Virus record (IMG/VR): IMGVR_UViG_3300032236_001850
Coordinates: 62,001-126,000 of that record
Length of the DNA stretch: 64,000 bases
Strand: one strand, 5' to 3'
Under the pieces are notes generated by a model that saw nothing but the letters and a program-made list of their open reading frames with translations, made no database searches and was not told the DNA's origin. Of this stretch, positions 4,087 to 42,257 are shown piece by piece (the first letter of the stretch is position 1; each line of letters opens with the position of its first letter). Made by a program: the position numbers and the translations under genes.

Positions 4087-4329
4087 ATGGAAGATTCCTC
4101 TCAAAATCTAGAAATTCACGAGGCAGCGGATAGAATATATCCACTGATGGCCAATTACAGCTTTGATGCACAGGAAGAGATTATAAGGGATTTGCTGAGG
4201 GTGATCTACACAAGAAAACTCGATAGTAAAAAATATCATAAAGAGCATCTGGATATAGCAACAGAGCAATCGGAAAAAATGAAAGAAAAATACCCATTTA
4301 TATTTATAAAACAGGATGAAAAACTTTAG
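4087..4329 (+). CDS. hypothetical protein
   Basis: 80 aa ORF in operon. Confidence 0.7.
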   Translation: MEDSSQNLEIHEAADRIYPLMANYSFDAQEEIIRDLLRVIYTRKLDSKKYHKEHLDIATEQSEKMKEKYPFIFIKQDEKL

Positions 4330-5164
4330 CCTTGGTGATCGTATGAAGGAATTCTACGAAGACCGTTTTAGATATTATGTTCCACGCAGAACATACACAT
4401 TAATCAGAATTGACGGGAAAGCCTTCCACACCTACACAAAAGGTTTGGAGTCACCATTTGATGCAGGATTAATTGCAGACATGAATGAGACTACTGCCTA
4501 CCTTTGTAAAAATATTCAAGGTGCAAAATTTGGCTATGTTCAATCGGATGAGATCAGCATACTTATTACTGATTTTGATGAGAGAGACACCCAGATGTGG
4601 TTTGACGGAAATCTACAAAAGATGGCTTCTGTTGCAGCTTCTATGGCTACATCAAAATTCAACGAATTAAGAGTAGTCAGAGTCCTTAGAAAATACGAAT
4701 GCCAATTTGATACACCATTACAAATGGACACCGATTCGATATTAGAATTTCTTTCTAAGATTAAAAAAGCGGAGTTCGATGCTAGAGTATTTCAGATTCC
4801 ACAAAAAAGCGAGGTTGAGAACTATTTCATCTTCAGACAACAAGACGGTACCAGAAACTCCGTCCAGTCGGTTGCTCAGAGCCTATATTCACAAAGTGAA
4901 TTAAATGGCAAGAAGGAGAAGGATATGCAGGAGATGATTTTTCAAAAAGGTATCAACTGGAATGATTACCACTTCAGAGAAAAAAGAGGTGGAATTATTG
5001 CTAAGGTTCCGACAATGATGGAGGGTAAGAATGGTCAGGTTGAAAGACTGAAATGGCAAATGATTCCAACTCCTATATTCACTCAGGAGAGAGAATTCAT
5101 GGACATTATGATTCCAGAGTTTGAAATTAAATCACCTAAATCTGAAGAAGTTGAGGTACAATAG
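4316..5164 (+). CDS. thg1: tRNA-His guanylyltransferase Thg1-like 3'-5' polymerase
   Basis: Motifs IRIDGKAFHTYT, YVQSDEISIL, FDARVF, YFIFRQQD, GINWNDY. Confidence 0.92.
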   Translation: MKNFSLGDRMKEFYEDRFRYYVPRRTYTLIRIDGKAFHTYTKGLESPFDAGLIADMNETTAYLCKNIQGAKFGYVQSDEISILITDFDERDTQMWFDGNLQKMASVAASMATSKFNELRVVRVLRKYECQFDTPLQMDTDSILEFLSKIKKAEFDARVFQIPQKSEVENYFIFRQQDGTRNSVQSVAQSLYSQSELNGKKEKDMQEMIFQKGINWNDYHFREKRGGIIAKVPTMMEGKNGQVERLKWQMIPTPIFTQEREFMDIMIPEFEIKSPKSEEVEVQ

Positions 5165-7471: not shown

Positions 7472-8404
7472 ATGGTATTAAATCTTTCTGAACCGTGCAG
7501 CTACGGTATCAAATTCAAAGTCTCTAAATTTCCTGATGGACAACAAGCCATCACTATATTAGAGGGAGAAGTTCTCAAATACAACATGTTTGAGAAATTG
7601 GAACCCGTGGTAATAAAATCAAGAATAACATCCTTCTTGGATCTTGAGTTAGTTATCTGTGCAAATAGAGCTCTTAAGGAACTTGGTGTTAAAGAAACTT
7701 CACTCGAGATATCATATTTATTGGGTGCAAGATCCGATAGAAAATTCGAAACCGGAAGCGTTAATTACATCAAGGAGATACTTGCTCCAATCATCAACGC
7801 ACAGAATTTTTCAAGAGTAACGGTACTTGATCCACATTCGGACGTAACTGAAGCGTGTATCAACAACTTCAAAAAGGAAACTCAATGGAGTCAAGGGTTG
7901 ATAACATTTGTGCTACGTGATTATTTCGTCGGTGGAAGCACGGACTATTCCAAAATGAGATTAGTATCTCCGGATGCTGGTGCTCTTAAGAAAGTTTATG
8001 ATGTTGCCGAGTCTATCGGGTATAGTCACGACATAGTTATAGCATCGAAACACAGAGATGTTAAAACTGGAAAAATCACACACACTGATGTTCCAATCTC
8101 GGTACATGACGTGGATAAAGATTTCTTCATACTGGATGATATTTGTGACGGTGGTAGAACCTTTATCGAGATTGCTAAGGCAATCAAAACGAAACAATCA
8201 ATTTCCAGCGCGGTTCATCCAGAGAATCACGGTAAGATTTTTCTGGTTGTAACACATGGAATATTCTCAGCAGGTTTAAAACCACTAAATGAATATTTCG
8301 ATGGTATTTATACAACGAATAGCTATGTTGATATGGCTGATCCTGAATTCTCATTAAGAAACGATAATGAGATGCACAAACTTAAACAATTAAAAGTTAT
8401 CTAA
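7472..8404 (+). CDS. prs: ribose-phosphate pyrophosphokinase family protein (PRS or NARP1 Adps-like)
   Basis: KFPDGQ, YLLGARSDRKF, LDPHSDV, VSPDAGALK, ILDDICDGGRTF, VTHGIFS. Confidence 0.9.
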   Translation: MVLNLSEPCSYGIKFKVSKFPDGQQAITILEGEVLKYNMFEKLEPVVIKSRITSFLDLELVICANRALKELGVKETSLEISYLLGARSDRKFETGSVNYIKEILAPIINAQNFSRVTVLDPHSDVTEACINNFKKETQWSQGLITFVLRDYFVGGSTDYSKMRLVSPDAGALKKVYDVAESIGYSHDIVIASKHRDVKTGKITHTDVPISVHDVDKDFFILDDICDGGRTFIEIAKAIKTKQSISSAVHPENHGKIFLVVTHGIFSAGLKPLNEYFDGIYTTNSYVDMADPEFSLRNDNEMHKLKQLKVI

Positions 8405-11139: not shown

Positions 11140-12213
11140 ATGGAAAATAATAAAAAGTTTTTAAAGAACTATTTAGATGCATTCTCCCCCGTAGGAAAAG
11201 AATTTGAAGGACAGAAAATTTGGATTGATTACGTTAGACCCTTTGTTAATGAAATGAGAGTAGATGCTTATGGTACAGCATACGGTCTTATCAAGGGAAC
11301 AGGAGAAAAGAAAGTAATCTTGGAAAGCCACGTTGATGAAATTTCCTGGATTGTGACAGAGATAGAATCAAATGGAATGATCCGGGTTAAAACTAATGGT
11401 GGATCAGACAACATGATTGCCCCATCAATGACAGTGCTTGTCCACACTCACGAGGGTAAAAAGATACCTGGAGTTTTTGGATGGCCTGCTATCCACGTTA
11501 GAGAAAAAAGAGTTGAGATGGGACCGGAAGTTCACGAACTTTGGGTTGACCTTGGAGTTGACACTGCAAAGAAAGTTGCAAAACTTGGTGTTGAGGTTGG
11601 AAACTGCGTTACTTTTGACCAACCTTTCTTTGAACTTGGTAAGTATTACGTTGGTAGATCACTAGACAACAAAATTGGTGGATATATCATCGCAGAGGTT
11701 GCAAGAGAGCTTAAAGAAGAGGGTACGGTTTTACCATTCGACCTTTACATCGTTAATGCTGTCCAGGAGGAAGTTGGTTTATTTGGAGCGAGATTGATTG
11801 CTCAAACAATTAAACCAGACATCGCATTGGTTCACGATGTTACACACAACACAAACTCTCCTAAGATGAACAAAGCCAAATCTGGTGATGTTAAGGGAGG
11901 TGCAGGTCCGGTTATCGAGTATTCATCTCAAAACCACAAAGACCTAATCAAGATTGTTAGAGACGTTGCTAAGAAAAAAGAAATCCCTATGCAGCTGTCT
12001 GTTGGATCATACGGAAACGACACTGTTTCTTTCTTCCTTGAAAACGTCCCTACGGTGATCGTAGCGAGTCCGTTGAAGTATATGCATACTACAGTAGAGA
12101 TGGTTCACAAAGATGACGTAGCGGCTGCAATACAAGTTTTTAAAGAGACATTAAAGCAGTTGACTACAGGTACTATCGTTACCATCAACGACCAAACACA
12201 TAAATACGTATAA
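11140..12213 (+). CDS. M42 family metallo-aminopeptidase
   Basis: ESHVDEI, SLDNKIG, VQEEVGL, HDVTH, LKYMHT metal-ligand motifs. Confidence 0.9.
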   Translation: MENNKKFLKNYLDAFSPVGKEFEGQKIWIDYVRPFVNEMRVDAYGTAYGLIKGTGEKKVILESHVDEISWIVTEIESNGMIRVKTNGGSDNMIAPSMTVLVHTHEGKKIPGVFGWPAIHVREKRVEMGPEVHELWVDLGVDTAKKVAKLGVEVGNCVTFDQPFFELGKYYVGRSLDNKIGGYIIAEVARELKEEGTVLPFDLYIVNAVQEEVGLFGARLIAQTIKPDIALVHDVTHNTNSPKMNKAKSGDVKGGAGPVIEYSSQNHKDLIKIVRDVAKKKEIPMQLSVGSYGNDTVSFFLENVPTVIVASPLKYMHTTVEMVHKDDVAAAIQVFKETLKQLTTGTIVTINDQTHKYV

Positions 12214-17646: not shown

Positions 17647-19332
17647 ATGAATAAATTAAACGAAACTTTTAAAATCAACCCGCTTTACGAATCTGACGGG
17701 TACAAAGTTGGCCACAAAGCAATGTTGGCAGAAAACACTTCAGTTGAATATTGGACTTGGATCCCTAGAAGCATCAAGTACATGCACCCATCAATCGATG
17801 GTATCATGTCAGCAGGTGAACAGCTAGTTTGGAGATACATCCACAGCAACTTCCAGGAGTTATTCTTCAACAAACCAGTGGAAGCTGCAGAAAAATTCGG
17901 AAGAGACATGGCTGCATATCTTATGATGGATTACGACGCCGATCATTTTGTGGAACTTCATAAACTTGGATATCTTCCAGTTAGAATCAAAGCCATTCCT
18001 GAAGGGACATTTACAAAACCAAATATTCCACACATGACAGGAATCAACACAGTTGATGGTTATGCTTGGCTTGGACTTTACTTAGAAACTTTGGTTTCTA
18101 AGTTGGCTTGGCAATTACCAACTGCTGCTACCATCGCACACAGATTCAAACAGAATGCTGTTGAATGGGTTACCAAAACAGATCCAGAGAATCTTTGGTT
18201 AGCTGATTTCATGTGTCACGATTTCCACAGTAGAGGTGGTAACCCTTTCACCTCGATTGCAGTTGGTTTAGGACATGCCATGAGTAATTCAGGTAGCGAC
18301 ACATTAAATGTTATTCCAGCATCAAGATACTACTACGATTTTGATGAGAACGAGGTTCCTGTCTATAGTGTTAATGCTTCAGAGCACAGTGTGACATGCA
18401 CAGGTATTTTCTTCTACGAGAAAAAATTAAGAAGCGGTTTATTAAACCACGAAATTGTTTCTTACTACACAAGCACTGCACCTTCAGAGGGATCAGTTCA
18501 GGATCCTGACTATTTAGCAATTGCTGAATTACTTAATCTTCGTGATTGGTTGGAAAAATTTCCTAAAGGTATTCTTTCAGTTGTTTCTGACACGATGAAT
18601 CTATGGAAGGTGATCACTCACATCCTACCAAGACTTAAAAAAGAAATCCTTGCAAGAGATGGCAAATTGGTAATTAGACCTGACAGTGGAGACCCAGTTG
18701 ATATCATTTGTGGAACAACAACTATTAATAACAAGTGGGTAGAAGGAATACTTCCGCAATCTGAGTGTGAAAAGAAAGGTGTAATAGAACTTCTTTGGGA
18801 CATCTTTGGAGGTGAAGAAACTTCAACTGGATACAAAAGATTAGATTCTCACATTGGAGCAATCTACGGGGATTCAATCAACTTAGAAAGACAAATCGCT
18901 ATCTACACAAGATTAGCAGATAAAGGATTTTCAGCTACAAACATCGTGGTTGGTGTTGGTTCTTACACGTATGTTATGCTAACGAGAGACTCCGCTGGAT
19001 ATGCAGCTAAAGGAGCTTGGTTCGCTACTAAGGAATTTAACGGTGTTGATCCTGATGGTCAAACCGATTATATCACAACGGAGTATAACATCTACAAAGA
19101 TCCAGTAACTGATAACGGTACTAAAAAATCATTAAAAGGTTTCTGCCAGGTATTCAATAATAGACCAGATGCTTTACCTCACGAGATTAAGTACGACGGT
19201 AAGGATCAATTGGAAGTAAACACCGAATGCACTAAGGATCAAGAAGCTGGTGGTTTATTAAATATCATCTACGAAGATGGTAAATTCTATAATCAAGTCA
19301 CACTAACAGAGATTAGAGAAAGATTAAAATAA
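17647..19332 (+). CDS. nadV: nicotinamide phosphoribosyltransferase family (NAMPT or NARP1 Namat-like)
   Basis: SDGYKVGH, HDFHSRG, NASEHSVT, SVVSDT, LVIRPDSGDP, IYGDSI, KKSLKG. Confidence 0.93.
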   Translation: MNKLNETFKINPLYESDGYKVGHKAMLAENTSVEYWTWIPRSIKYMHPSIDGIMSAGEQLVWRYIHSNFQELFFNKPVEAAEKFGRDMAAYLMMDYDADHFVELHKLGYLPVRIKAIPEGTFTKPNIPHMTGINTVDGYAWLGLYLETLVSKLAWQLPTAATIAHRFKQNAVEWVTKTDPENLWLADFMCHDFHSRGGNPFTSIAVGLGHAMSNSGSDTLNVIPASRYYYDFDENEVPVYSVNASEHSVTCTGIFFYEKKLRSGLLNHEIVSYYTSTAPSEGSVQDPDYLAIAELLNLRDWLEKFPKGILSVVSDTMNLWKVITHILPRLKKEILARDGKLVIRPDSGDPVDIICGTTTINNKWVEGILPQSECEKKGVIELLWDIFGGEETSTGYKRLDSHIGAIYGDSINLERQIAIYTRLADKGFSATNIVVGVGSYTYVMLTRDSAGYAAKGAWFATKEFNGVDPDGQTDYITTEYNIYKDPVTDNGTKKSLKGFCQVFNNRPDALPHEIKYDGKDQLEVNTECTKDQEAGGLLNIIYEDGKFYNQVTLTEIRERLK

Positions 19333-21437: not shown

Positions 21438-23363
21438 ATGCACACACAAATTGCAAGTTTATTGGGCTATGCTTGGGTAATCATCCCAGTTTTAGCATTG
21501 CTATTCTACAAATTCACACTCCGAATGTTTTTCGGTATGGTGATAATCCCGGAGGACAAGATTGGTTTGGTTACCAAAAAATTCGTTCTTTTCGGTTCAA
21601 ATAAAAATTTACCAGACGGTAAAATCATTGCTCTAAATGGTGAACCTGGTTATCAAGCAGACACATTAGCACCTGGTTATTTAGGATGGGGTTATTGGCC
21701 TTGGCAGTACACAATCGATCAATCGCCATTCGTAGTAATCGCAAAAGGAAAAATTGGTTTAGTTACAGCAAGAGATGGTGCCCAGTTACCTACAGGTTCC
21801 ATTTTAGCAAGACACGTTGACTCTGATAACTATCAATCAGCCAGAGAATTCTTAGCAAATGGAGGACAACGTGGTAAACAAGTTGGTTATCTTAACAATG
21901 GGGTATATCGTATCAATAAACACTTATTCGAAGTGTATGAAGCTGATATCACTTATATTGAGGATGGACAAGTTGGTATCATCACTGCCCTAGACGGTAT
22001 TCCGTTGGATGCTGGAAACATTGCAGGTAACGTTATTGATGGTCACAACAATTTCCAAAATTTCGACAAGTTCTTAGAAAATGGAGGACAACGTGGTCTA
22101 CAAACACAAGTTGTACAAGCTGGTAACTATTCATTAAATCCATGGGCAGTGGAGGTTGAAAAAGTTGCAATGACACAGATTCCTATTGGACACGTTGGTG
22201 TTATTATCTCCTATGTTGGTGCAGAAGGTAAGGATGTAACTGGAGAAGGATTCAAACACGGTAATATCGTTGATAAAGGACAAAAAGGTGTTTGTATTAC
22301 ACCATTAGATCCAGGTAAATATGCGATCAATCCATATACACACAAAATTGAAGTTGTACCAACAACTAACTTAGTACTTAACTGGGCTAATGCTCGTACA
22401 GAGTCACACAATTTGGATAAAGGATTAAGCACAATCACAGTGCGTTCTAAAGACGGTTTCCCATTCAACTTGGACGTTTCTCAAATCATCCACATCCCAT
22501 CAACTGAAGCACCTAAGGTTATTGCTCGATTTGGAGCCATGCAAAACCTTGTATCTCAAGTACTTGAGCCTACAATCGGTAACTACTTCCGTAACTCAGC
22601 ACAAAATTCTGATGTTATCTCATTCTTAAATGATCGTCAAAAACGTCAAGATGCTGCTAAAAACGAAATCAAAAAAGTACTTGACGAGTATAATGTACAT
22701 GCAGTTGATACATTGATTGGAGACATCACACCTCCTGAGTCGTTAATGAAAACTCTTACTGACCGTAAGATTGCAGAAGAGGAGCAAACAACTTTCAACG
22801 TGCAACAAGCTGCACAAGAGCAAAAACAAAAATTGGCTTCTGCAAAAGCTTTAGCTGATATGCAAGGTGAAATCGTACAAGCTGAACAATCGGTAATGAT
22901 TGCCGATAGAAAGGCACAAACGAAGGTTAAGGAATCTGAAGGGGAGGCAACATCTATGAAACTTAAAGCAGCTGCACAAGCGGAAGCCAAAGAGATCATG
23001 GCAAAAGCGGATGCAACACAAATCAAATTAACCGGAGAAGCAGAAGCATCTAAGATTGAGGCGATTGGTAAAGCAACAGCGGAAGCTTACGAGAAACAGG
23101 TTAAAGCAATGGGAGCAGACAACTTCGGACAATTAAAAGTTGTTGAGTCGATTGGTATGAACAACATCAAAATCATTCCTGAGATTCTTATCAGCGGAGG
23201 TGATGGTGGTAACGGACCTATCTCAGGTTTACTTGGAATGGAGTTACTGAACCAGGTTAATGCTAGAAAAGCAGAAGCAGCAGCTCCTGCGGTAGTAAAA
23301 GAAACACCTGCCTCGTCAGGACCTTCAATAACACAAGAAGGACCTAAAAAAGGTAACAAATAA
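21438..23363 (+). CDS. SPFH/band 7/flotillin domain membrane protein
   Basis: N-terminal TM, repeated RG.Q...L..G.Y.IN modules, TITVRSKDGFPFNLDVSQI, Ala/Glu-rich flotillin coiled coil. Confidence 0.88.
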   Translation: MHTQIASLLGYAWVIIPVLALLFYKFTLRMFFGMVIIPEDKIGLVTKKFVLFGSNKNLPDGKIIALNGEPGYQADTLAPGYLGWGYWPWQYTIDQSPFVVIAKGKIGLVTARDGAQLPTGSILARHVDSDNYQSAREFLANGGQRGKQVGYLNNGVYRINKHLFEVYEADITYIEDGQVGIITALDGIPLDAGNIAGNVIDGHNNFQNFDKFLENGGQRGLQTQVVQAGNYSLNPWAVEVEKVAMTQIPIGHVGVIISYVGAEGKDVTGEGFKHGNIVDKGQKGVCITPLDPGKYAINPYTHKIEVVPTTNLVLNWANARTESHNLDKGLSTITVRSKDGFPFNLDVSQIIHIPSTEAPKVIARFGAMQNLVSQVLEPTIGNYFRNSAQNSDVISFLNDRQKRQDAAKNEIKKVLDEYNVHAVDTLIGDITPPESLMKTLTDRKIAEEEQTTFNVQQAAQEQKQKLASAKALADMQGEIVQAEQSVMIADRKAQTKVKESEGEATSMKLKAAAQAEAKEIMAKADATQIKLTGEAEASKIEAIGKATAEAYEKQVKAMGADNFGQLKVVESIGMNNIKIIPEILISGGDGGNGPISGLLGMELLNQVNARKAEAAAPAVVKETPASSGPSITQEGPKKGNK

Positions 23364-36619: not shown

Positions 36620-37441
36620 ATGAGTATCTTCAAAAAAGGTAAATTAAGTAAGCCAGAATTCATCTCCAAGATGATTGGCGCAGTCATCTCGCTTTTGGCA
36701 TTTGGCTTCATTTGGACCATCCAGTTTCCAGGTGACACAGTAAAGGACAATGGTTCCTTAAGTTTTTCAGCAATGCACACAACATTCAACATTGCTTTCT
36801 TGGTAGGCTTATTTGTCTACATTGTTATCCTAATGAGAAAATCATTAGATCAAAATTTAGAATGGGAATTCAGGGAGACAAAAGACACTGATAAAAACCC
36901 ATTTGGTAGTGTAACCGGACTATTGATTTTATTGCTTCTATTCGTTGGAGCAAGTAGATTCTATAAGGACTCAAAAGCCATCTATAACAAAACAGTGGTA
37001 TACCAAAATGACTATGCACAAGTAAATCAAGAGAAGGAAACATATTACGACAACATGTGGAAATCTTATACACTTAAACATAATGTGCTAATCGAGAACA
37101 AAGCCACATTCATCGAGGTAACTAAGATGATTATGGACGGAAGACACGACGGTGAGCATCTTACTTGGAAATGGTTACAAGAAAACCAACCGGTGCCATA
37201 TAACGAATTTACACGATTCTATGCTGATCTATCACAGTTCGTAGAAAGCCAAAGAGCAGGATATTTAGCACTAGAAGTTAAGTCACAAAACATTGCAAAA
37301 GCTAATAATATATTGCTGCAGACTTTCCCGAACAATATATACAACAAGGTTCTGAACAGATCACAGATTGATTATAAACCTGGATTTACCTCAATCAGAA
37401 CAAGACAAGTATTCGAACACGGAATAGAAGAAGTTGAGTAA
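36620..37441 (+). CDS. LemA-like protein with extra N-terminal TMs
   Basis: C-terminal half is a paralog of 29151..29708 (YDNMWK, WLQENQP, YADLS, TFPNNIY). Confidence 0.65.
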   Translation: MSIFKKGKLSKPEFISKMIGAVISLLAFGFIWTIQFPGDTVKDNGSLSFSAMHTTFNIAFLVGLFVYIVILMRKSLDQNLEWEFRETKDTDKNPFGSVTGLLILLLLFVGASRFYKDSKAIYNKTVVYQNDYAQVNQEKETYYDNMWKSYTLKHNVLIENKATFIEVTKMIMDGRHDGEHLTWKWLQENQPVPYNEFTRFYADLSQFVESQRAGYLALEVKSQNIAKANNILLQTFPNNIYNKVLNRSQIDYKPGFTSIRTRQVFEHGIEEVE

Positions 37442-37488
37442 CATTTAAAAAATCGGGATTGAAAAATCCCGATTTTTCTTCCAAATTA

Positions 37489-37521
37489 TTTTTTTATTCA
37501 AAAAGGATTCCTTATATTTGC
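37489..37521 (+). promoter_or_regulatory. early/host-sigma promoter for the tRNA/ncRNA cluster
   Basis: TTTTTTTATTCAAA...TATATTTGC after terminator hairpin 37447-37477. Confidence 0.75.
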
Positions 37522-37544
37522 CTTGTAATTAAAAACAAAACAAA

Positions 37545-37613
37545 ATGGGAAAAGCAATAATAGGAATAATAGGAATAGCAGCAACTGTAATAGTGATGAT
37601 GCTAACCAAGTAA
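37545..37613 (+). CDS. 22 aa hydrophobic peptide (not in ORF track)
   Basis: MGKAIIGIIGIAATVIVMMLTK; A-rich leader. Confidence 0.45.
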   Translation: MGKAIIGIIGIAATVIVMMLTK

Positions 37614-37622
37614 ATTAAAAAA

Positions 37623-37699
37623 GGTCCTTAAACTTAATTGGCATGGCGCCAAACTGGCTTCTAAACCCAGCGTCTCCGGTTCGAGTCCGGTAGGGATCA
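37623..37699 (+). tRNA. tRNA, anticodon most consistent with CUA (amber suppressor); alternative reading is degenerate tRNA-Arg(UCU)
   Basis: Acceptor GGTCCTT/AGGGATC+A, T arm CCGG TTCGAGT CCGG, anticodon arm CTGGC TTCTAAA CCCAG (4 WC pairs + C.C); atypical D arm; no encoded CCA. Confidence 0.6.
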
Positions 37700-37713
37700 C
37701 AAAAAACAAAGTC

Positions 37714-38046
37714 ATGAGAGAATTAACATGGACAACATATTACGGTGAGGTCAAAAGATTTTCAGAGATTGATCATCAACATCTATCAAACATTCTTTGG
37801 TTCAGAGAGATTCTAACAGGTGCAAATCTTTGTAACTGCGAAGTTCAAAGAGCATTAAATTCAGAATTGAAGAGATTTGGTGGTAAGCGATTACCTTGGA
37901 AACCATTACCAATTCCACAGGAAATAGAATGGATAAGAGGAGCTGCTTATATAAACCAAAAAGGTGAGATAATAGGAACAATGAAAACACCATCACATTA
38001 TGGTAAAGTTATTGGATCCGTTGCTCATATAGAAAAACTCAACTAG
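37714..38046 (+). CDS. hypothetical protein
   Basis: 110 aa ORF inside RNA cluster. Confidence 0.75.
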   Translation: MRELTWTTYYGEVKRFSEIDHQHLSNILWFREILTGANLCNCEVQRALNSELKRFGGKRLPWKPLPIPQEIEWIRGAAYINQKGEIIGTMKTPSHYGKVIGSVAHIEKLN

Positions 38047-38117
38047 CGGAGAGTAGGGGTAACCCAAAAATAGCTAAGCTGTGTTAAGCGACAGAACTGA
38101 TAATCTGTTAGAAGCTA

Positions 38118-38277
38118 GGTTGGATGGCGGAAAGCTTATAATGTGAGAAATCATGTTATAACGTGGCAGACGCTAGATTAGAGAAAGGACGCGATCGGGG
38201 TTGGAATACCGATAATGGCGAAAATGGAAGAACCAACGCTTTAATTACCATTGTGGGTTCGAATCCCACTTCAACCA
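38118..38277 (+). ncRNA. tRNA-shelled RNA A (160 nt) with D-loop and anticodon-arm insertions
   Basis: GGTTGGA/TTCAACC+A acceptor, GTGGG TTCGAAT CCCAC T arm, Leu-type GCGGAA...TGGCAGACGC D arm split by a GAAA hairpin. Confidence 0.75.
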
Positions 38278-38291
38278 CAAATCAACGATGT

Positions 38292-38368
38292 TAACTACCT
38301 GTGGTATCTACGGGGGCTAGGGAGAAACCTAGAAACTTACTTCGGTAAGTTAAGGAGCAAATGAGTTA
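38292..38368 (+). ncRNA. candidate multi-hairpin structured RNA
   Basis: TAACT/AGTTA closing stem enclosing CCTGTGG/CTACGGG, CTAGG GAGAAA CCTAG and AACTTAC TTCG GTAAGTT. Confidence 0.5.
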
Positions 38369-38519
38369 CAGTTCGGATTTAAACCTTAAAAAAGCTACTG
38401 CTTTAATGATATGTAGATTCAGAATAGCTTGTACTATTTAGGTACCTGAACCATTCAAAGAAGTTTTAGCAGATGATGATATTTTTTAGCTGCGGCGGAA
38501 ATTTTTTGATTCATCAAAC

Positions 38520-38611
38520 AGCCAGGTAGGCACAAGGTCGGTTCGAGTCCGATGGAAGGTCATGGATGACGGGTAGCACCCTGCATGGAGGTTCGATTCC
38601 TTCACTGGCTA
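38520..38611 (+). ncRNA. tRNA-like RNA B (92 nt) with two T-arm-like hairpins
   Basis: AGCCAG/CTGGCT+A acceptor, GGAGG TTCGATT CCTTC T arm, extra TCGG TTCGAGT CCGA; no canonical anticodon arm. Confidence 0.6.
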
Positions 38612-38612
38612 C

Positions 38613-38738
38613 AAAAACATAACAGGATTAAGTTCGACCTTGCCGAGATTAAGCCTCGTATCTTATATTTTTATTACGGTCTTTGCCGACCCAGAAATAT
38701 CGGATATCGCTAGCGTGGTAGCGGGATGTTATGTTTTT
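38613..38738 (+). ncRNA. candidate structured RNA closed by a perfect 12-bp stem
   Basis: AAAAACATAACA (38613-24) / TGTTATGTTTTT (38727-38), internal hairpins CGAG/CTCG, GGTC/GACC, CGCTA/TAGCG. Confidence 0.5.
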
Positions 38739-38742
38739 ATTT

Positions 38743-39024
38743 GATCAGATGGCGGAATTGGTAGACGCACCCCAAAAAACAAAGCATCTGAGGGGCGGTT
38801 AAATAAGGAGGACGCAGACTCCGAATAATCCAGAACAGCAAGGACGTAAGATGAAATGACATCTTCAGCCTTGTGTCGGAAGTTGGGAATTAACCCGTGA
38901 TACCAGAATAACCGATGTTCCAAGGTAGGTTATTCTTTAGGTGTGAGATGAAGACCGTTAAGGTTGAGTGACACAAGGGATTGACAGGGTCCAAATCGTA
39001 CAGGTTCGAATCCTGTTCTGATCA
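38743..39024 (+). ncRNA. tRNA-shelled RNA C (282 nt): Leu-type shell with ~215 nt structured insert replacing the anticodon loop
   Basis: Perfect GATCAGA/TCTGATC+A acceptor, canonical GCGGAATTGGTAGACGC D arm, ACAGG TTCGAAT CCTGT T arm. Confidence 0.8.
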
Positions 39025-39038
39025 CAAAAAAATGGAAT

Positions 39039-39185
39039 ATGACATTTGATGAATGGATTTATAAGGTTTGCTTACATATAAGCAACAGGACAAGAAAGGA
39101 GATTACTGATGTTTATTCATCAATTGATCTAACAGATGCAAAGCTAACATTTCTGGACGGGATTAATCCGGAAGAATATAATTGA
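39039..39185 (+). CDS. small hypothetical protein (48 aa, not in ORF track)
   Basis: MTFDEWIYKVCLHISNRTRKEI...EEYN. Confidence 0.5.
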   Translation: MTFDEWIYKVCLHISNRTRKEITDVYSSIDLTDAKLTFLDGINPEEYN

Positions 39186-39442
39186 GTATGATTGAGTACT
39201 ATGTAGGTATTGATCCTAAAGACAGAGAAAAGTTTGATTCTTATGTTGAATATCTGAATAATGATCAGCAATGCGACCCTAAATGTAAAATAGAGGTTCT
39301 GCATGAATTTGATGATCCTGACGGATACTATACATTTATGATTCAGGGTCATTGGGATTCATACACTAAATTTTTAGGAGAAACCGGATACGGTAGAGAA
39401 ACGGATGGATTTGTTAAATCAATCAATCACTACGAGGAATAG
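39182..39442 (+). CDS. hypothetical protein
   Basis: 86 aa ORF ending in TAG, in frame with next gene. Confidence 0.7.
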   Translation: MSMIEYYVGIDPKDREKFDSYVEYLNNDQQCDPKCKIEVLHEFDDPDGYYTFMIQGHWDSYTKFLGETGYGRETDGFVKSINHYEE

Positions 39443-39445
39443 ATT

Positions 39446-39772
39446 ATGAACGTTGACTTATTTAGACACTGGATTCCAGATCTAAGACTAACTCGGAATA
39501 AGAGTGCTTATGTTGCAAAACAGTGTCCAGTTTGTCCGCGTACACCGCATAGTAAATCATTTAGAATAAACACCAAACTTAAAGTTTGGAAATGTTATCA
39601 GTGTGGCAGAAGTGGTAAATCATTTAACAAAATGATACATTACTTAAAGAAGAGAGACACTAAAAGAAAGGAGTTACAATATTTGAAGAAAATAGGTCGT
39701 CGTCCAAAGTGTGTTCCTATTGACGTTCATTACGGGTGTGAAACGTACTATGAATCTACGTTACCGTTTTGA
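39446..39772 (+). CDS. stand-alone primase-type zinc finger (CHC2-like) protein
   Basis: CPVCP...SFRIN...VWKCYQCGRSG resembles the DnaG Zn-binding domain; no TOPRIM domain. Confidence 0.6.
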   Translation: MNVDLFRHWIPDLRLTRNKSAYVAKQCPVCPRTPHSKSFRINTKLKVWKCYQCGRSGKSFNKMIHYLKKRDTKRKELQYLKKIGRRPKCVPIDVHYGCETYYESTLPF

Positions 39773-39778
39773 CATACA

Positions 39779-39816
39779 GCCCGTGAGGACGTAAAGGCGA
39801 ATAAGCGGGCTTTTTA
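39779..39816 (+). terminator. hairpin with large loop plus T tract
   Basis: AGCCCG ... CGGGCT TTTT. Confidence 0.55.
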
Positions 39817-39851
39817 AAATTTTTACAAAAAGTGAAACAAAAAAGAAAATT

Positions 39852-39861
39852 GAATATATAA
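39852..39861 (+). promoter_or_regulatory. putative late promoter (GAATATATAA)
   Basis: Same RATATATA motif found before structural genes; 18 nt before ATG 39880. Confidence 0.55.
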
Positions 39862-39879
39862 TAATAAATTAAGAACACA

Positions 39880-40233
39880 ATGACTTAGATTAACAAATTT
39901 CAAGAAACAAAACTGGTAGTAATCACCAGAGCTGATATTCATCCAGGGTATCAAATTGTCCAGAGCACACATTCGCTCGCAGATTTTGCACACGAACATC
40001 CTACAAAGTTCAAAGAATGGAAAGAGACAACAAATTCTATAATTTGTCTCTCCGCAAAATCAGAATCTCATTTAATTAAACTTTACGAAAAATTAAGACA
40101 CGTCACAGAGGCATCATTATTTTTTGAGCCTGATGTTGACGCATATACTTCTGCGTGCTTTTTTGGCACTCCGCAGGTTAGGAAATCATTGTCCAACCTT
40201 TCGTTATCTCTAAAAAATCTACAAACATCATGA
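39880..40233 (+). CDS. pth2: peptidyl-tRNA hydrolase type 2-like protein with in-frame TAG at codon 3 (not in ORF track)
   Basis: ATG ACT TAG ATT AAC..., then open: KLVVITRADIHPGYQIVQSTHSLADF...EWKETTNSIICL...FEPDVDAYTSAC; no other in-frame ATG or GTG. Confidence 0.75.
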
Positions 40234-40640
40234 AAGGAATTCTAAAAGTTAGAAACATTGACTCTATTAAAAAGCTGAGTCTTAAAAGGGCCATCGGTAA
40301 ACAGAAAGGCCTATGGTTTAGAATGATGAAGATCAGAACCACAATTCTATTTCTTGAAGAGCACAACATGCTCAAAATTCAACAGCTGTGGGATATACTG
40401 GAAGTTTATCTGAATTACCAAATCGAATATTCTAAATTGCAGTATCTGATCTACATTAGAAAAAGAGGCTCCTGGAGTAATTATTCTACACTATCACAGG
40501 AAACTATGGAAGAGTATATTAAAAAGATCGCCGTTAATTCCCATAGAATGACCAGCAATCTTCCATACGAAATCTATTACAAGTACAGGGTATCTATAGG
40601 TGAAATGGAAAGGAAAATAAATGAAAATAAAGGCATTTAA
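40230..40640 (+). CDS. hypothetical protein
   Basis: 136 aa; ATGA overlap with the Pth2-like stop supports translation of the upstream frame. Confidence 0.7.
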   Translation: MKGILKVRNIDSIKKLSLKRAIGKQKGLWFRMMKIRTTILFLEEHNMLKIQQLWDILEVYLNYQIEYSKLQYLIYIRKRGSWSNYSTLSQETMEEYIKKIAVNSHRMTSNLPYEIYYKYRVSIGEMERKINENKGI

Positions 40641-40750
40641 AGGGACAAAGATTAAAAAGCATACATTTATATAAACACACAAAAACAATTAAACAACGAG
40701 CTTTATTTAGGCTCACACGAACAATAAATTAACAAAAATAAATTAAAATT

Positions 40751-41056
40751 ATGAAAACAAAAGAACAAAACAGACAAGATGTAGTGAACTACTTAAGAAC
40801 AACTTCTAAACATGCATTCTTTAGAGGTGAAAAGGGAATCTTCAAAATCGAGGAGATTGAGGAAGGTGTATTTAATGAGATGGTTGGTGGGATCCAATCC
40901 AAGACAAACATCAACATCAATTGGTTTGTTGATAATTACGGTAACGATGCAAAGAACGTTATCAGAAAAAGAATATTCTATGATGGACATGGTTACAAAT
41001 CCATCAAGATGAAGTATTACAACAAATTGAATGAAACAAAAAAGGTGCTTATTTAA
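40751..41056 (+). CDS. hypothetical protein
   Basis: 101 aa ORF. Confidence 0.75.
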   Translation: MKTKEQNRQDVVNYLRTTSKHAFFRGEKGIFKIEEIEEGVFNEMVGGIQSKTNININWFVDNYGNDAKNVIRKRIFYDGHGYKSIKMKYYNKLNETKKVLI

Positions 41057-41065: not shown

Positions 41066-41412
41066 CTTATTAGTAATTCTCCCATGACCTCTATGAGACC
41101 AACGAGCTTCTGAAATTCAACCTGTTCCAGTTTTATAGATCCAGCTGTTCCTTTAACTAATGCTTTTACCAAAGCTTCCATCTCATCCTTCATCTCAGCT
41201 GCATCGAATTTACCAGCAGCAGCTTTTTCATAAACCGGAAGTTTAACTCTGAAATGATGGTAGGTTAAAAGCGCATCCCCACCTTTTTCTTTAGCAGCTT
41301 CAGTTATCTTGGTTGCACCAGCTAATCTTGTTTTTGCAAACTCTTCGAAGCTTTCGCCTTTTTTATCTCCTTCGTTTAGAAAATCCGAATATAATTTAAT
41401 GTAGTTGTCCAT
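41053..41412 (-). CDS. hypothetical protein with capsid-targeting-like N-terminus
   Basis: MDNYIKLYSDFLNE. Confidence 0.8.
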   Translation of the reverse strand: MDNYIKLYSDFLNEGDKKGESFEEFAKTRLAGATKITEAAKEKGGDALLTYHHFRVKLPVYEKAAAGKFDAAEMKDEMEALVKALVKGTAGSIKLEQVEFQKLVGLIEVMGELLIRKGA

Positions 41413-42257
41413 TATGATAAATTTCTTTTGTCTGTATTTAACGAACCAAGCTTTCCTTGATTTTTAAGTTTAATGTAACGATCTGTAGCAAATCTAGGTC
41501 TTGCATAAGTCATTATATCTAATCCCTGATTATTTTTAACAATCTCCAATGCTTTCTCTAGTGTTTCAACCATATATCGGCAATCATAAAGAGCATCGTG
41601 TGCACCATTAGGATCAACACCCAATCCTGCGGAAACCTTAGGTAAAGAGGATGTAGGTAACTTACCACTATTAGATCTTCCTATCTTATCCAATATTGCA
41701 GCAGCTTCTGGTTCTGTTTCTGCAAGTTTCTCCAATGTAGGTAAAAGGAAATACCCAAAGAAATCTTTAGTGTCAAATATCTCATGATCCAATCCACCAA
41801 ATTCTTTTCTAACATTTATCATTGGCATATCGAAAGGAGCATTTTGAATAAGTAGAATAACATCACCAAATCCATCTATAAATTCTTTAAGTTCAGTAAG
41901 TACTTCCTGTTCATCGAAGTATTGTCCGCCACTTTCTCCGTATTTATTAAACTTTAGAGCTCCAGATATTCTAGATCCAGGTAATAGTTTTTCTGCTCTT
42001 ATGTTTTGATTGAGTTTTATCTTCTTGTTGTAATCTCCTATCTCTTCAAAAGTCAAAGTATCAAAATCAAACTCATAGGCAACAGCAGCTACTTGAGTTA
42101 ATTGTTCTTGTCTTGGACCTCTAAGTCCAGTTGTTTCGGTATCAAGAGCAATAAAAGTGTATTCCTTTCTTTTTTCTAACCAATCTAATAGTTCTGATTG
42201 CGTTAAATTTTTAATGCTTTCATTTAAAAATTGCGAAAATGTTGATAAATTTTTCAT
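41412..42257 (-). CDS. DEDDh 3'-5' exonuclease (DnaQ-like) with capsid-targeting-like N-terminus
   Basis: IALDTETTGL (ExoI), QNAPFDM (ExoII), HDALYDC (ExoIII); MKNLSTFSQFLNES. Confidence 0.88.
   Translation of the reverse strand: MKNLSTFSQFLNESIKNLTQSELLDWLEKRKEYTFIALDTETTGLRGPRQEQLTQVAAVAYEFDFDTLTFEEIGDYNKKIKLNQNIRAEKLLPGSRISGALKFNKYGESGGQYFDEQEVLTELKEFIDGFGDVILLIQNAPFDMPMINVRKEFGGLDHEIFDTKDFFGYFLLPTLEKLAETEPEAAAILDKIGRSNSGKLPTSSLPKVSAGLGVDPNGAHDALYDCRYMVETLEKALEIVKNNQGLDIMTYARPRFATDRYIKLKNQGKLGSLNTDKRNLS

What the first reader, a model, noticed from the sequence alone, without database searches (positions are those of the whole stretch)
37489..40233. Whole translation-interference locus: early promoter, odd tRNA, ~1 kb RNA array with no ordinary tRNA, then amber-gated Pth
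Seen: none of the four tRNA-shaped elements is a clearly normal decoding tRNA. Together with the Thg1-like enzyme at 4316, the window is enriched for tRNA repair or mimicry. Known: hosts use anticodon nucleases and tRNA-targeting toxins (PrrC, RloC, PARIS AriB, retron effectors) against phages. Inference: this is a coordinated counter-defence or translation-rewiring module.
Basis: inference. Interest (0 to 1): 0.75.

Follow-up and report, generated by a model that had tools for sequence, protein, structure and literature searches.

The report
Private suppressor tRNA gates phage hydrolase
A 434 kb freshwater phage that otherwise uses the standard genetic code carries an oddly shaped UAG-reading tRNA and one tRNA-hydrolase-like gene that can be translated only by reading through a UAG at its third codon; this pairing recurs in many related phages, including a cultured one, while the RNA stretch between the two parts is a fast-changing set of tRNA look-alikes that have no anticodon.

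Summary
The stretch 37489-40233 contains:
- a promoter of a roughly 55-copy family;
- a non-canonical tRNA with anticodon CUA (37623-37699);
- about 1 kb of non-coding RNA with three tRNA look-alikes and no ordinary tRNA;
- a PTH2-like ORF (39880-40233) with no canonical start codon, headed by ATG-ACT-TAG.

Comparative data sharpen this. The leader ATG-(1-7 codons)-TAG-purine heads the PTH2-like gene in 18 distinct homologues. The ORF is under purifying selection (dN/dS about 0.2, dS up to saturation).

A tRNA(CUA) lies nearby on the same strand in 12 homologues: all 10 IMG/VR loci with enough flank, cultured Tenacibaculum phage pT24 and LR756500. In several relatives an adjacent HD-domain gene carries the same leader. 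In pT24 the two enzymes are fused behind one TAG.

This genome and pT24 are otherwise standard-code, and no other gated gene was found in either.

Best reading: a one- or two-gene amber gate opened by a phage-private suppressor tRNA. The intervening array differs between close relatives and its role is unknown. The counter-defence idea is plausible but untested. No expression data could be obtained.

The parts
37489..37520 (+). Promoter: A/T-rich upstream element ATTTTTTTAT plus -7 box TATATTTG(C), Bacteroidota type
   Evidence: One of about 55 near-identical sites in the genome, each 20-45 nt before an ATG. The same type heads the main tRNA cluster. The -7 octamer alone is not enriched.
37546..37614 (+). 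22-codon hydrophobic mini-ORF between the promoter and the tRNA
   Evidence: Read from the sequence. Conserved in L015. Function unknown.
37623..37699 (+). Non-canonical tRNA with anticodon CUA: 8-bp acceptor stem, 4-bp T stem, A73, a 7-8 nt connector (AACTTAAT) before a D hairpin, and a C31.C39 mismatch
   Evidence: Rfam tRNA 23.6 bits. ARAGORN finds it only at relaxed settings. Across 10 lineages the acceptor is paired in 77/80 cells, four anticodon-stem pairs in 40/40 and the T stem in 40/40, with 2-5 pair types per position. The loop YU-CUA-AA is invariant.
37714..38046 (+). 110-aa ORF of unknown function, not part of the conserved core
   Evidence: Present in W, L009 and L010 (83% identity); absent from L015. 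No Pfam, PHROG or Atlas lead.
38047..38117 (+). Conserved non-coding leader ahead of the first tRNA look-alike
   Evidence: 93% identical to L015 and also present in L009 and L010. Too conserved to show covariation.
38118..38277 (+). tRNA look-alike E2: 7/5 acceptor/T minihelix, Leu-type D arm with a GAAA-capped hairpin inserted in the D loop, long branched arm in place of the anticodon arm, A73
   Evidence: Rfam tRNA 27.9 bits, below the gathering score of 29. Eight of 48 predicted pairs show compensatory changes among 3 genomes, and the acceptor stem is rewritten (GGTTGGA to AGTCAGG) with pairing kept.
38278..38511 (+). Conserved non-coding stretch ('ncRNA-A')
   Evidence: About 90% of columns are invariant among 3 genomes, against 81-83% identity in flanking genes. 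All six frames are closed and substitutions show no 3-nt periodicity. Fold z-score is only -0.97. No Rfam family.
38520..38611 (+). tRNA look-alike E3b: acceptor plus T arm, a second T-arm-like hairpin where the D arm should be, short hairpins instead of an anticodon arm, A73
   Evidence: Shared with L009 and absent from L010.
38743..39024 (+). tRNA look-alike E4: Leu-type 5' part and normal T arm and acceptor, separated by an insert of about 209 nt
   Evidence: ARAGORN in intron mode; acceptor pairing. The insert is unique to this genome. No group I intron or other Rfam match. The last 25 nt are nearly identical to a 90-nt tRNA look-alike at genome 219906-219995.
39039..39772 (+). Three small ORFs (48, 86 and 108 aa); the last carries a CHC2 zinc ribbon
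   Evidence: PF01807 E=2.5e-5, just below cut-off. Present in only some relatives.
39775..39818 (+). Terminator-like hairpin followed by a T run
   Evidence: Read from the sequence and conserved in L012. Its loop is too large for the scanner.
39854..39865 (+). ATATATAATAA box 16 nt before the ATG; possibly a second promoter class
   Evidence: Six similar sites lie 20-26 nt before ORFs in the genome. Not conserved in all relatives. Weak.
39880..39888 (+). Amber leader ATG-ACT-TAG (TAG at 39886-39888), followed by A
   Evidence: ATG-(1-7 codons)-TAG-purine is found in 18 distinct homologues. It is the only such ORF in this genome.
39889..40233 (+). PTH2-like ORF body (114 codons plus stop), with no canonical start of its own
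   Evidence: Pfam PTH2 E=2e-4; phrog_1866 E=1e-13; PDB profile 2zv3 E=4e-5. Foldseek's best hit and six of its top twelve are Pth2, but TM is about 0.5 and VIA Z is 5.9. dN/dS 0.17-0.25.
40230..40640 (+). 136-aa all-helical ORF overlapping the PTH2-like stop by ATGA; probably translationally coupled
   Evidence: The overlap is conserved in relatives. No family or fold match.

Best explanation
The core of the locus is a two-part translational lock.

Part one is a phage-encoded amber-suppressor tRNA (anticodon CUA, 37623-37699), transcribed from a host-type promoter.

Part two is a PTH2-like hydrolase gene. Its reading frame starts at ATG 39880, meets TAG at codon 3 and has no other usable start. 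The enzyme is therefore made only when the phage's own tRNA reads that TAG. Failure yields only a dipeptide.

The 136-aa ORF overlapping the stop is probably coupled to the same gate. Elsewhere in the genome TAG still ends 14-17% of genes. This is therefore a private gate on one gene (two in relatives), not a change of genetic code.

Shown:
- the anatomy of both parts;
- conservation of the leader;
- co-occurrence of the tRNA;
- covariation in the tRNA;
- purifying selection on the ORF;
- absence of other gated genes.

Inferred:
- that the tRNA is charged and decodes UAG (amino acid unknown; Gln or Leu are the obvious candidates);
- that the gate sets timing or dose;
- that the enzyme acts on acylated tRNA 3' ends, as part of the phage's tRNA-end maintenance kit together with the HD-domain partner seen in relatives.

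The roughly 1 kb between the two parts is a rapidly changing insertion zone. It carries tRNA look-alikes that keep every feature needed for end-processing (7/5 minihelix, D arm, A73, the same 'C-AAAA' trailer as the real tRNAs) but have no anticodon loop. Most likely they are stable, CCA-tailed, non-decoding tRNA-scaffold RNAs. Their function is unknown.
For: The gate:
- The ORF has no ATG, GTG or TTG for 100 codons, with an in-frame ATG two codons before the TAG.
- The leader is kept in 18 distinct homologues while the codons before the TAG vary in sequence and number (1, 2, 4, 5 or 7). ATG and TAG are always in frame, the stop is always TAG, and the next base is always a purine.
- dN/dS is 0.17-0.25, and the TAG persists at dS above 1.5.
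- L032 and L037 have GTA or GTT after the TAG, which are not start codons.

The tRNA:
- A tRNA(CUA) lies on the same strand 0.1-3.5 kb upstream in 10 of 10 IMG/VR loci with flank. It lies 2.6 kb upstream in cultured phage pT24, where GenBank annotates it as tRNA-Sup, and 1 kb downstream in LR756500.
- Its stems covary strongly and its loop YU-CUA-AA is invariant. L028 encodes A73-CCA after the 8-bp stem.
- tRNAs with an 8/4 acceptor/T arrangement work on E. coli ribosomes (PMC5389517).

Scope of the gate:
- There is no genome-wide recoding.
- It is the only gated ORF in this genome and in pT24.
- The same leader heads the adjacent HD-domain gene in 5 relatives. PTH2 and HD are fused behind one TAG in pT24.

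The array:
- T-loop motif enrichment.
- Compensatory changes in E2.
- The same 3' trailer as the 30 canonical tRNAs.
- The phage encodes a CCA-adding enzyme.
Against: - There is no expression, aminoacylation or proteomic evidence.
- This genome's tRNA(CUA) is below the thresholds of both tRNA detectors. It has an unusual connector and a 31.39 mismatch, so its decoding ability is unproven.
- TAG terminates 14-17% of long ORFs, so a strong suppressor would be costly.
- No tRNA(CUA) was found within 4-5 kb of the gene in three huge-phage relatives (LR745206, LR756502, LR756504). Their whole genomes were not searched.
- PTH2 membership is borderline for this copy. The Lys of the archaeal GKGK motif aligns to an invariant Tyr here.
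- Structural matches are middling.
- For the array: contents are not conserved beyond close relatives, and ncRNA-A folds no better than shuffles.
Confidence: 0.65

Rival explanations
1. Mini-uORF and re-initiation. ATG-NNN-TAG is a two-codon upstream ORF. Ribosomes that terminate there re-initiate on the next codon (AUU), and the CUA tRNA has nothing to do with it. The pairing of a Pth-type gene with a two-codon minigene would recall the lambda bar minigenes, whose toxicity depends on Pth (from memory).
For: In most homologues the codon after the TAG is ATT, a known weak bacterial start codon. The leader is very short. Bacteroidota initiation does not depend on Shine-Dalgarno sequences (general knowledge).
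Against: The stop is TAG in 18 of 18 PTH2 leaders and 5 of 5 HD leaders, although TAA ends 70-76% of this genome's long ORFs and TAG to TAA is a single transition. The next codon is GTA, GTT, ATA or AAT in L032, L037, pT24 and L041. Leader length varies from 1 to 7 codons yet always stays in frame. A tRNA(CUA) co-occurs nearby in 12 lineages.
Confidence: 0.1
2. One reading: the whole stretch, together with the Thg1-like gene, is one coordinated counter-defence module against host tRNA-cleaving or tRNA-modifying systems. The look-alikes act as decoys or spare parts, and the PTH2-like enzyme clears damaged, still-acylated tRNAs.
For: The genome has Thg1-like, CCA-adding, RNase T-family and TROVE/Ro60-like genes. 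Jumbo-phage PTH2, Thg1, CCA-adding enzyme and TROVE have been read as an RNA-repair kit (PMC7824862). The look-alikes keep the acceptor/T minihelix that end-processing enzymes recognise. The PTH2-HD fusion in pT24 links two activities that could act on tRNA 3' ends.
Against: No defence or counter-defence assay exists. The array is not syntenic beyond close relatives and is nearly absent in L015. The Thg1-like gene lies 33 kb away. No RtcB is present; other RNA ligases were not searched for. This view does not explain why the gene needs an amber gate.
Confidence: 0.25
3. The array is evolutionary debris: decaying copies of tRNA(Leu)-type genes and insertion scars in a recombination-prone, homing-endonuclease-visited gap, with no function of its own.
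For: Relatives differ in a mosaic pattern. A GIY-YIG endonuclease replaces part of the array in L009. The E4 insert is unique to this genome. There are no homologues in distant relatives. The fold z-score of ncRNA-A is -0.97.
Against: Non-coding parts are more conserved (88-95%) than neighbouring genes (81-83%). The E2 acceptor stem is rewritten with pairing kept. All look-alikes keep A73 and the tRNA-type trailer.
Confidence: 0.25
4. The tRNA look-alikes are Y-RNA-like partners of the phage's TROVE/Ro60-like protein. They would resemble YrlA RNAs, but with the ends at the acceptor stem and the long arm closed by a loop.
For: A TROVE-domain ORF lies at genome 223.8-224.6 kb. A 90-nt long-arm look-alike lies 4 kb from it and shares its 3' 25 nt with E4. 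[quoted passage not shown]
Against: There is no Rfam Y-RNA or YrlA match even at E<=10. The topology differs from YrlA. The array lies 120 kb from the TROVE gene. The GNCGAA motif was looked for only by eye, not formally searched, and was not seen.
Confidence: 0.12

Closest known systems
Stop-codon recoding with phage suppressor tRNAs (crAss-like, Lak and other gut phages: Borges et al. preprint 10.1101/2021.08.26.457843; Yutin et al. PMC7886860)
   Same: A phage-encoded tRNA(CUA) in a phage of a standard-code Bacteroidota-type host. In-frame TAG is proposed to make expression of certain genes depend on the phage's own tRNA. Such tRNAs are often non-canonical and missed by detectors.
   Different: In those phages dozens of late, structural and lysis genes are recoded and TAG is lost as a stop. 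Here the genome is standard-code, TAG ends 14-17% of genes, and only one gene (two in relatives) carries a single TAG, always within the first 3-9 codons. The gated genes are tRNA-end enzymes, not lysis genes.
tRNAs with 8/4 or 9/3 acceptor/T-stem geometry ('allo-tRNAs', Mukai et al. 2017, PMC5389517)
   Same: A 12-bp acceptor branch split 8+4. Some are found in phages and some are nonsense suppressors. They occur next to other irregular tRNA-like genes in polycistrons.
   Different: Allo-tRNAs have a long variable arm and a Sec-like D arm. This family has a 4-5 nt variable loop, a 7-9 nt single-stranded connector before the D hairpin and a 31.39 mismatch. Deeper relatives (pT24, LR756500, L032) have ordinary or near-ordinary shapes.
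PTH2 (archaeal/eukaryotic-type peptidyl-tRNA hydrolase) of jumbo phages (Iyer et al. 2021, PMC7824862)
   Same: Same Pfam family by profile. It sits beside tRNA genes, as in mycobacteriophage Myrna gp84.
   Different: Myrna gp84 has an ordinary start. This clade's gene is amber-gated, the Lys of the GKGK motif is replaced by Tyr, and the gene is paired or fused with an HD-like domain.
YrlA / bacterial Y RNAs (Chen et al. 2014, PMC4201824)
   Same: Non-decoding RNAs that keep tRNA-like D and T arms and an acceptor. They are found in phages that encode a Ro60/TROVE protein.
   Different: Different topology, no Rfam match, and not adjacent to the TROVE gene.
Stable RNAs of unknown function in the phage T4 tRNA gene region, and engineered 'tRNA scaffolds' (from memory, not checked here)
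   Same: Structured RNAs carried in, or shaped like, a tRNA body and processed with the tRNAs.
   Different: No sequence relationship was tested. The comparison is only an analogy.

Membership tests
tRNA (Rfam RF00005 / ARAGORN) | Score at or above the curated threshold; standard cloverleaf | tested here: not met
   Rfam scores are 23.6 bits (37623-37699) and 27.9 bits (38118-38277) against a gathering score of 29. ARAGORN at default settings finds 0 tRNAs in the window. The genome's 31 other tRNAs pass.
Amber suppressor tRNA | 7-nt anticodon loop with U33, C34-U35-A36 and a purine at 37, on a paired stem in a tRNA body | tested here: met
   The loop YU-CUA-AA is invariant in 10 lineages. Four stem pairs are paired in 40/40 cells, with covarying acceptor and T stems.
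Amber suppressor tRNA | In-frame UAG in a conserved gene of the same genome | tested here: met
   TAG at codon 3 of the PTH2-like ORF, conserved in 18 homologues.
Amber suppressor tRNA | Aminoacylation and decoding of UAG on the ribosome | not testable with these tools
   No aaRS of four Pfam classes and no release factor in the genome. No RNA or protein data.
Stop-codon-recoded (TAG-sense) phage | Many genes with in-frame TAG; coding density rises when TAG is read as sense; TAG depleted as a terminator | tested here: not met
   ORF coverage is 0.757 against 0.794 with TAG as sense, the same gain as for TGA. Same-frame ORF pairs split by TAG have an ATG right after the TAG. TAG ends 14-17% of long ORFs.
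PTH2 (PF01981) | Pfam gathering score | tested here: inconclusive
   This copy scores 22.0 bits against a cut-off of 23. The pT24 homologue scores 32 bits over the full domain. Several database homologues carry PF01981. PDB profile hit 2zv3 E=4e-5.
PTH2 (PF01981) | PTH2 fold | tested here: inconclusive
   Model pLDDT is 76. Foldseek's best hit and six of its top twelve are Pth2 proteins, but TM is about 0.5. VIA Z is 5.9 to AF2095, no better than unrelated folds.
PTH2 (PF01981) | Catalytic residues (Lys of the GKGK loop and a downstream Asp; their roles are recalled from memory) | tested here: inconclusive
   The Lys aligns to an invariant Tyr (G-Y-Q). An invariant E-P-D motif is kept.
Group I intron in a tRNA gene | Match to the group I intron model; intron in the anticodon loop; exons that join into a normal tRNA | tested here: not met
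   No Intron_gpI hit at E<=10 in 1 kb or 4 kb searches. No convincing anticodon stem-loop can be rebuilt from the flanks of the 209-nt insert.
tmRNA | tRNA-like domain with G3:U70 plus a tag reading frame; detector hit | tested here: not met
   No ARAGORN or Rfam tmRNA on the + strand. Position 3:70 of the look-alikes read here is T-A (E2, E4, the tRNA(CUA)) or C-G (E3b), not G:U.
YrlA / Y RNA | Covariance-model match; adjacency to a Ro60/TROVE gene | tested here: not met
   No Rfam match. A TROVE gene exists but lies 120 kb away.
GOLLD / ROOL / HEARO and other large phage-associated RNAs | Rfam covariance-model match | tested here: not met
   No hit at the gathering threshold or at E<=10.

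The most novel reading that the evidence does not exclude
The CUA tRNA exists solely to license one enzyme pair (PTH2-like plus HD-like) that itself works on tRNA 3' ends. This would form a closed control loop: the state of the phage's tRNA pool (processing, CCA end, charging) sets how much tRNA-end-clearing enzyme is made.

The anticodon-less look-alikes would be CCA-tailed, perhaps aminoacylated, non-decoding tRNA mimics. They could act as substrates, buffers or decoys in the same circuit.

This would be a self-contained, tRNA-sensing translational circuit in a standard-code virus. It would also be a natural example of a single-gene 'private codon'.
Probability: 0.2. Interest if true: 0.85.

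Novelty: new variant of a known kind. Interest (0 to 1): 0.7.

Why it matters
Phage suppressor tRNAs have so far been discussed mainly as agents of wholesale recoding of late genes. Here the same device is reduced to its minimum:
- one unusual tRNA;
- one early TAG;
- one or two enzymes;
- a genome that otherwise keeps TAG as a stop.

The arrangement is conserved from 230 kb to 640 kb phages of Bacteroidota-type hosts.

This matters in four ways.

1. It gives a testable case of codon-level gene gating, because a cultured phage (Tenacibaculum phage pT24) has the same arrangement.

2. It may represent either the seed from which full recoding evolves or a stable end state.

3. It flags a systematic annotation error. 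The gene is dropped, truncated, or silently translated with Q at the TAG in public records.

4. It links a PTH2-like and an HD-like enzyme by fusion, pointing to a shared, still unknown activity on tRNA ends.

The neighbouring anticodon-less tRNA look-alikes add to the small set of natural non-decoding tRNA mimics.

Tried and rejected
Ideas tested and rejected:
- Genome-wide TAG or TGA recoding.
- Other amber-gated genes in this genome. None was convincing, and none beyond PTH2-HD in pT24.
- Group I intron, tmRNA, YrlA, GOLLD, ROOL or any other Rfam family in 37000-41000. There were no hits beyond two sub-threshold tRNA matches.
- Reading the look-alikes as intron-containing tRNAs. ARAGORN's 'introns' leave no credible anticodon arm.
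- An initiator-tRNA reading of the CUA tRNA. It has a G1-C72 pair, lacks three G-C pairs in the anticodon stem, and an in-frame ATG is always present upstream.

False lead:
- The 'Q' at the gate position in database homologues looked like evidence for Gln. It is an artefact: those proteins translate to the query only with TAG=Q, so the callers assumed the code.

Searches that gave nothing:
- Paralogues or distant homologues of the array RNAs (nhmmer).
- Function of the 110-aa and 136-aa ORFs by Pfam, PHROGs and Atlas. For the 136-aa ORF a structural search was also run; its best match was a HEPN toxin at E=1.3, which is not meaningful.
- Structural confirmation of the PTH2 fold, which gave only middling scores.
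- Literature searches for an amber-gated Pth or PTH2 gene.

Failed step:
- Read mapping. Two metatranscriptomes hold about 5-6% of the locus words.

Left open:
- A 'late promoter' reading of the ATATATAATAA box. Relatives use other promoter types.

Full report
CONTEXT

The window is bases 62,001-126,000 of a 434,509-bp phage genome with direct terminal repeats. Near-identical sequence occurs in pond and freshwater metagenomes.

What the genome encodes:
- A T4-type major capsid protein.
- 31 ordinary tRNAs clustered at 210-229 kb, none a suppressor.
- A CCA-adding enzyme and a TROVE/Ro60-like protein.
- Inside the window, a Thg1-like enzyme (4316-5164, Pfam E=8.7e-25) and an RNase T-family exonuclease (41412-42257, minus strand).
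- No release factor, no RtcB and no aminoacyl-tRNA synthetase of four Pfam classes were found.

The genome uses the standard code. Reading TAG as sense raises long-ORF coverage no more than reading TGA as sense does (0.757 to 0.794 and 0.795). TAG ends 14-17% of long ORFs.

THE OBSERVATION

- Promoter. 37489-37520 belongs to a family of about 55 near-identical sites (ATTTTTTTAT ... TATATTTGC). These lie 20-45 nt before start codons, and one heads the main tRNA cluster. The -7 box is the Bacteroidota type.
- T-loop motif. GGTTCGANTCC occurs five times in the window, all on the plus strand between 37678 and 39013, against 0.06 expected.
- No ordinary tRNA. None of the elements passes ARAGORN defaults or the Rfam gathering score. 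Two reach 23.6 and 27.9 bits against the tRNA model.
- The gated ORF. ORF 39880-40233 reads Met-Thr-TAG and then 114 open codons without a canonical start.

THE CUA tRNA

The element at 37623-37699 has the loop UU-CUA-AA. Homologues were found in ten lineages by looking for that loop followed by a T arm. All fit the same unusual shape:
- an 8-bp acceptor stem and a 4-bp T stem;
- discriminator A73;
- a conserved 7-9 nt single-stranded connector (A-R-Y-T-T-A-A-W) before a D hairpin whose loop contains GG;
- a 4-5 nt variable loop;
- a non-Watson-Crick 31.39 position in nine of the ten.

Covariation is strong:
- acceptor stem paired in 77/80 cells;
- four anticodon-stem pairs paired in 40/40 cells;
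- T stem paired in 40/40 cells;
- two to five pair types at most positions.

The seven loop bases YU-CUA-AA never change. One lineage (L028) encodes CCA after A73, which fixes the register of the 8-bp stem.

tRNAs with 8/4 geometry are known, occur in phages and function on E. coli ribosomes (PMC5389517). The known ones have long variable arms, which this family lacks. Deeper relatives (L032, pT24, LR756500) have ordinary-looking CUA tRNAs, so the odd shape is derived.

THE AMBER GATE

The leader ATG-(1-7 codons)-TAG heads the PTH2-like ORF in 18 distinct homologues:
- this genome;
- nine further IMG/VR lineages;
- three sets of short metagenome contigs;
- four huge phages of the LR7452xx and LR7565xx series;
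- cultured Tenacibaculum phage pT24.

Properties of the leader:
- The codons before the TAG differ (ACT, AAT, AAA, AAC, AAG, ACA; two-codon AAC-AAT and AAA-AAT; four-codon K-H-Q-Y; seven codons in L032).
- ATG and TAG are always in frame.
- The stop is always TAG, although TAA ends 70-76% of this genome's long ORFs.
- The next base is always a purine. From memory, this is the context that favours amber suppression in E. coli.
- The next codon is ATT in most homologues, but GTA, GTT, ATA or AAT in four others. That argues against simple re-initiation on AUU.

The ORF is under purifying selection (dN/dS 0.17-0.25). The TAG survives divergences at which synonymous sites are saturated.

In this genome it is the only ORF of 90 or more codons that lacks an early start and has an ATG just upstream of its bounding stop. 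Same-frame ORF pairs split by TAG are ordinary gene junctions.

Database proteins of this family show 'Q' at the gate, but only because their gene callers assumed TAG=Q. That is not evidence for glutamine.

CO-OCCURRENCE

A CUA tRNA lies on the same strand:
- 0.1-3.5 kb upstream of the gated gene in all ten IMG/VR loci with enough flank;
- 2.6 kb upstream in pT24, where GenBank already calls it tRNA-Sup;
- 1 kb downstream in LR756500.

Three huge-phage relatives showed none within 4-5 kb. Their genomes were not searched further.

pT24 has only four tRNAs (PMC5502841). It is standard-code, and the gated ORF is its only convincing amber-leader gene. The published annotation starts that CDS at an internal codon.

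Mycobacteriophage Myrna's PTH2 (gp84) has a normal start. The gate is therefore a feature of the clade that infects Bacteroidota-type hosts.

A SECOND GATED GENE

In five relatives the next gene, an HD-like protein of about 190 aa (weak Pfam HD hits), carries the same ATG-N-TAG-ATT leader. One lineage uses the identical leader peptide for both genes.

This genome has no homologue of that gene. In pT24 the PTH2 domain (32 bits, above the Pfam cut-off) and the HD-like domain (43% identical to the free-standing gene) are fused behind a single TAG. The two enzymes therefore probably act together.

WHAT THE ENZYME IS

PTH2 membership rests on sequence profiles:
- Pfam E=2e-4, just under the cut-off;
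- phrog_1866 E=1e-13;
- PDB profile hit to M. jannaschii Pth2, E=4e-5.

A model of medium confidence (pLDDT 76) gives a Pth2 protein as its best Foldseek hit and six of the top twelve. However, TM is about 0.5 and the VIA Z of 5.9 is no better than for unrelated folds.

The Lys of the archaeal GKGK loop aligns to an invariant Tyr, while an invariant E-P-D motif is kept. 'PTH2-like hydrolase of unproven specificity' is the honest label.

THE ARRAY (38047-39024)

Its contents:
- a 70-nt leader, 93% identical to L015;
- look-alike E2, whose acceptor stem is rewritten between relatives with pairing kept, with eight compensatory pairs among three genomes;
- a 234-nt non-coding stretch that is about 90% invariant, closed in all frames, and folds no better than shuffles;
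- look-alike E3b;
- look-alike E4, with a 209-nt insert unique to this genome.

All three look-alikes have a normal 7/5 acceptor/T minihelix and A73, and E2 and E4 also carry a Leu-type D arm. All are followed by the same 'C-AAAA' trailer as the genome's 30 plus-strand canonical tRNAs. They are therefore probably end-processed like tRNAs.

None has an anticodon loop. Long irregular arms, some capped by GNRA-type loops, take its place.

Contents differ between close relatives:
- L015 has only one 88-nt look-alike.
- L009 has a GIY-YIG endonuclease in place of 38610-39827.
- L009 and L010 carry an extra lipoprotein-like ORF.

Distant relatives share nothing here. In L028 and L032 the tRNA and the gated gene are about 60-100 nt apart. 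The array is thus an insertion-prone spacer between two conserved partners, not a conserved third component.

MECHANISM

The best-supported reading is a private amber gate. The PTH2-like enzyme, and probably the overlapping 136-aa ORF by coupling, is made only when the phage's own CUA tRNA is present, matured and charged. Failure costs only a dipeptide.

Why these enzymes are gated is unknown. Three possibilities:
- dose or timing control of an enzyme that could be harmful;
- restriction of expression to cells where the phage tRNA programme is running;
- a feedback loop in which enzymes acting on tRNA 3' ends are tuned by the state of a phage tRNA.

A role in repairing tRNAs attacked by host defences fits the genome's toolkit and published views on jumbo-phage PTH2, Thg1, CCA-adding enzyme and TROVE (PMC7824862). 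It remains untested.

COMPARISON WITH THE KNOWN

The closest precedent is stop-codon recoding with suppressor tRNAs in crAss-like, Lak and other phages. The present case differs in scale (one or two genes), in the position of the TAG (always within the first nine codons), in the target (tRNA-end enzymes rather than lysis or structural genes) and in the retention of TAG as a normal stop. I rate it a new variant of a known kind.

LIMITS

- There are no expression data. The single read-mapping call was lost to a filter.
- The amino acid inserted at the TAG is unknown.
- The role of the array is unknown.
- Statements about suppression context, Pth2 catalytic residues, lambda bar minigenes and T4 stable RNAs rest on memory.

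Noticed in passing
L044 (Tenacibaculum phage pT24, LC168164.1: 191520-191593 and 194083-195036): This cultured phage has an annotated tRNA-Sup(CUA). 2.6 kb downstream lies ATG-AAA-TAG followed by a 314-codon PTH2-HD fusion ORF. GenBank CDS BPT24_235 starts at an internal codon, so the PTH2 domain's N-terminus is missing from the record. Genome-wide it is the only convincing amber-leader ORF.
   Followed up: yes
L012 5750-6334, L017 5330-5916, L030 7010-7581, L038 1451-2071, L041 3740-4315: An HD-like gene next to the PTH2-like gene carries the same ATG-N-TAG-ATT leader in five relatives. The window's genome has no homologue.
   Followed up: yes
LR756500.1 (handle W02): ATG-NNN-TAG-AT[AT] occurs 58 times on the strand that carries the PTH2-like gene, against 27 for the reversed-pattern control. 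One occurrence lies 350 nt downstream of the PTH2 leader. This 462 kb phage may gate many more genes.
   Followed up: no
L046 (Mycobacterium phage Myrna, NC_011273.1: 33036-33593): PTH2 gp84 has a normal GTG start inside a tRNA cluster. The tRNA 130 nt downstream, annotated tRNA-Ser (gene 86), has the loop UUCUAAA closed by a C.C mismatch. That gives a CUA anticodon with the same arm design as in the window.
   Followed up: partly
genome 219906-219995 and 223870-224631 (outside the window): A 90-nt tRNA look-alike has a long GNRA-capped arm instead of an anticodon arm. Its last 25 nt nearly match window 39000-39024. It lies 4 kb from a TROVE/Ro60-like ORF of 530 codons.
   Followed up: partly
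window 4316-5164: Thg1-like 3'-5' nucleotidyltransferase (Pfam E=8.7e-25).
   Followed up: partly
window 41412-42257 (minus strand): An RNase T-family DEDD exonuclease lies 1.2 kb from the gated gene. It could trim tRNA 3' trailers.
   Followed up: no
genome 180-192 kb (outside the window) and window 388, 6689, 11110, 17043, 19394, 29100, 35315, 37513, 42328: There are two promoter classes sharing the TATATTTGC box. One has ATTTTTTTAT upstream; the window sites listed are of this class. The other has ACTTTAACG...ATCGTT upstream and is confined to 180-192 kb.
   Followed up: partly
L009 6587-7261: A GIY-YIG homing-endonuclease-like ORF occupies the place of window 38610-39827. A SegE-like ORF also precedes the gated gene on contig L036.
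   Followed up: partly
proteins P0001-P0038 (public protein collection): Gene callers translated the early TAG of this family as Q (code 15-type models). Other records truncate the protein at an internal GTG or TTG. This is a systematic annotation problem.
   Followed up: yes
genome 211562-211635: The phage's own tRNA-Leu(UAG) is only 74 nt long with a short variable loop. Class-I-shaped Leu tRNAs therefore exist in this genome, which bears on what the Leu-type look-alikes and the CUA tRNA may derive from.
   Followed up: no
window 7472-8404, 11140-12213, 17647-19332, 21438-23363: Auxiliary genes: a phosphoribosyltransferase, an M42 aminopeptidase, a NAPRTase-family enzyme and an SPFH/Band 7 protein.
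   Followed up: no
window 37546-37614: A 22-codon, strongly hydrophobic mini-ORF lies between the promoter and the CUA tRNA. It is conserved in L015.
   Followed up: no
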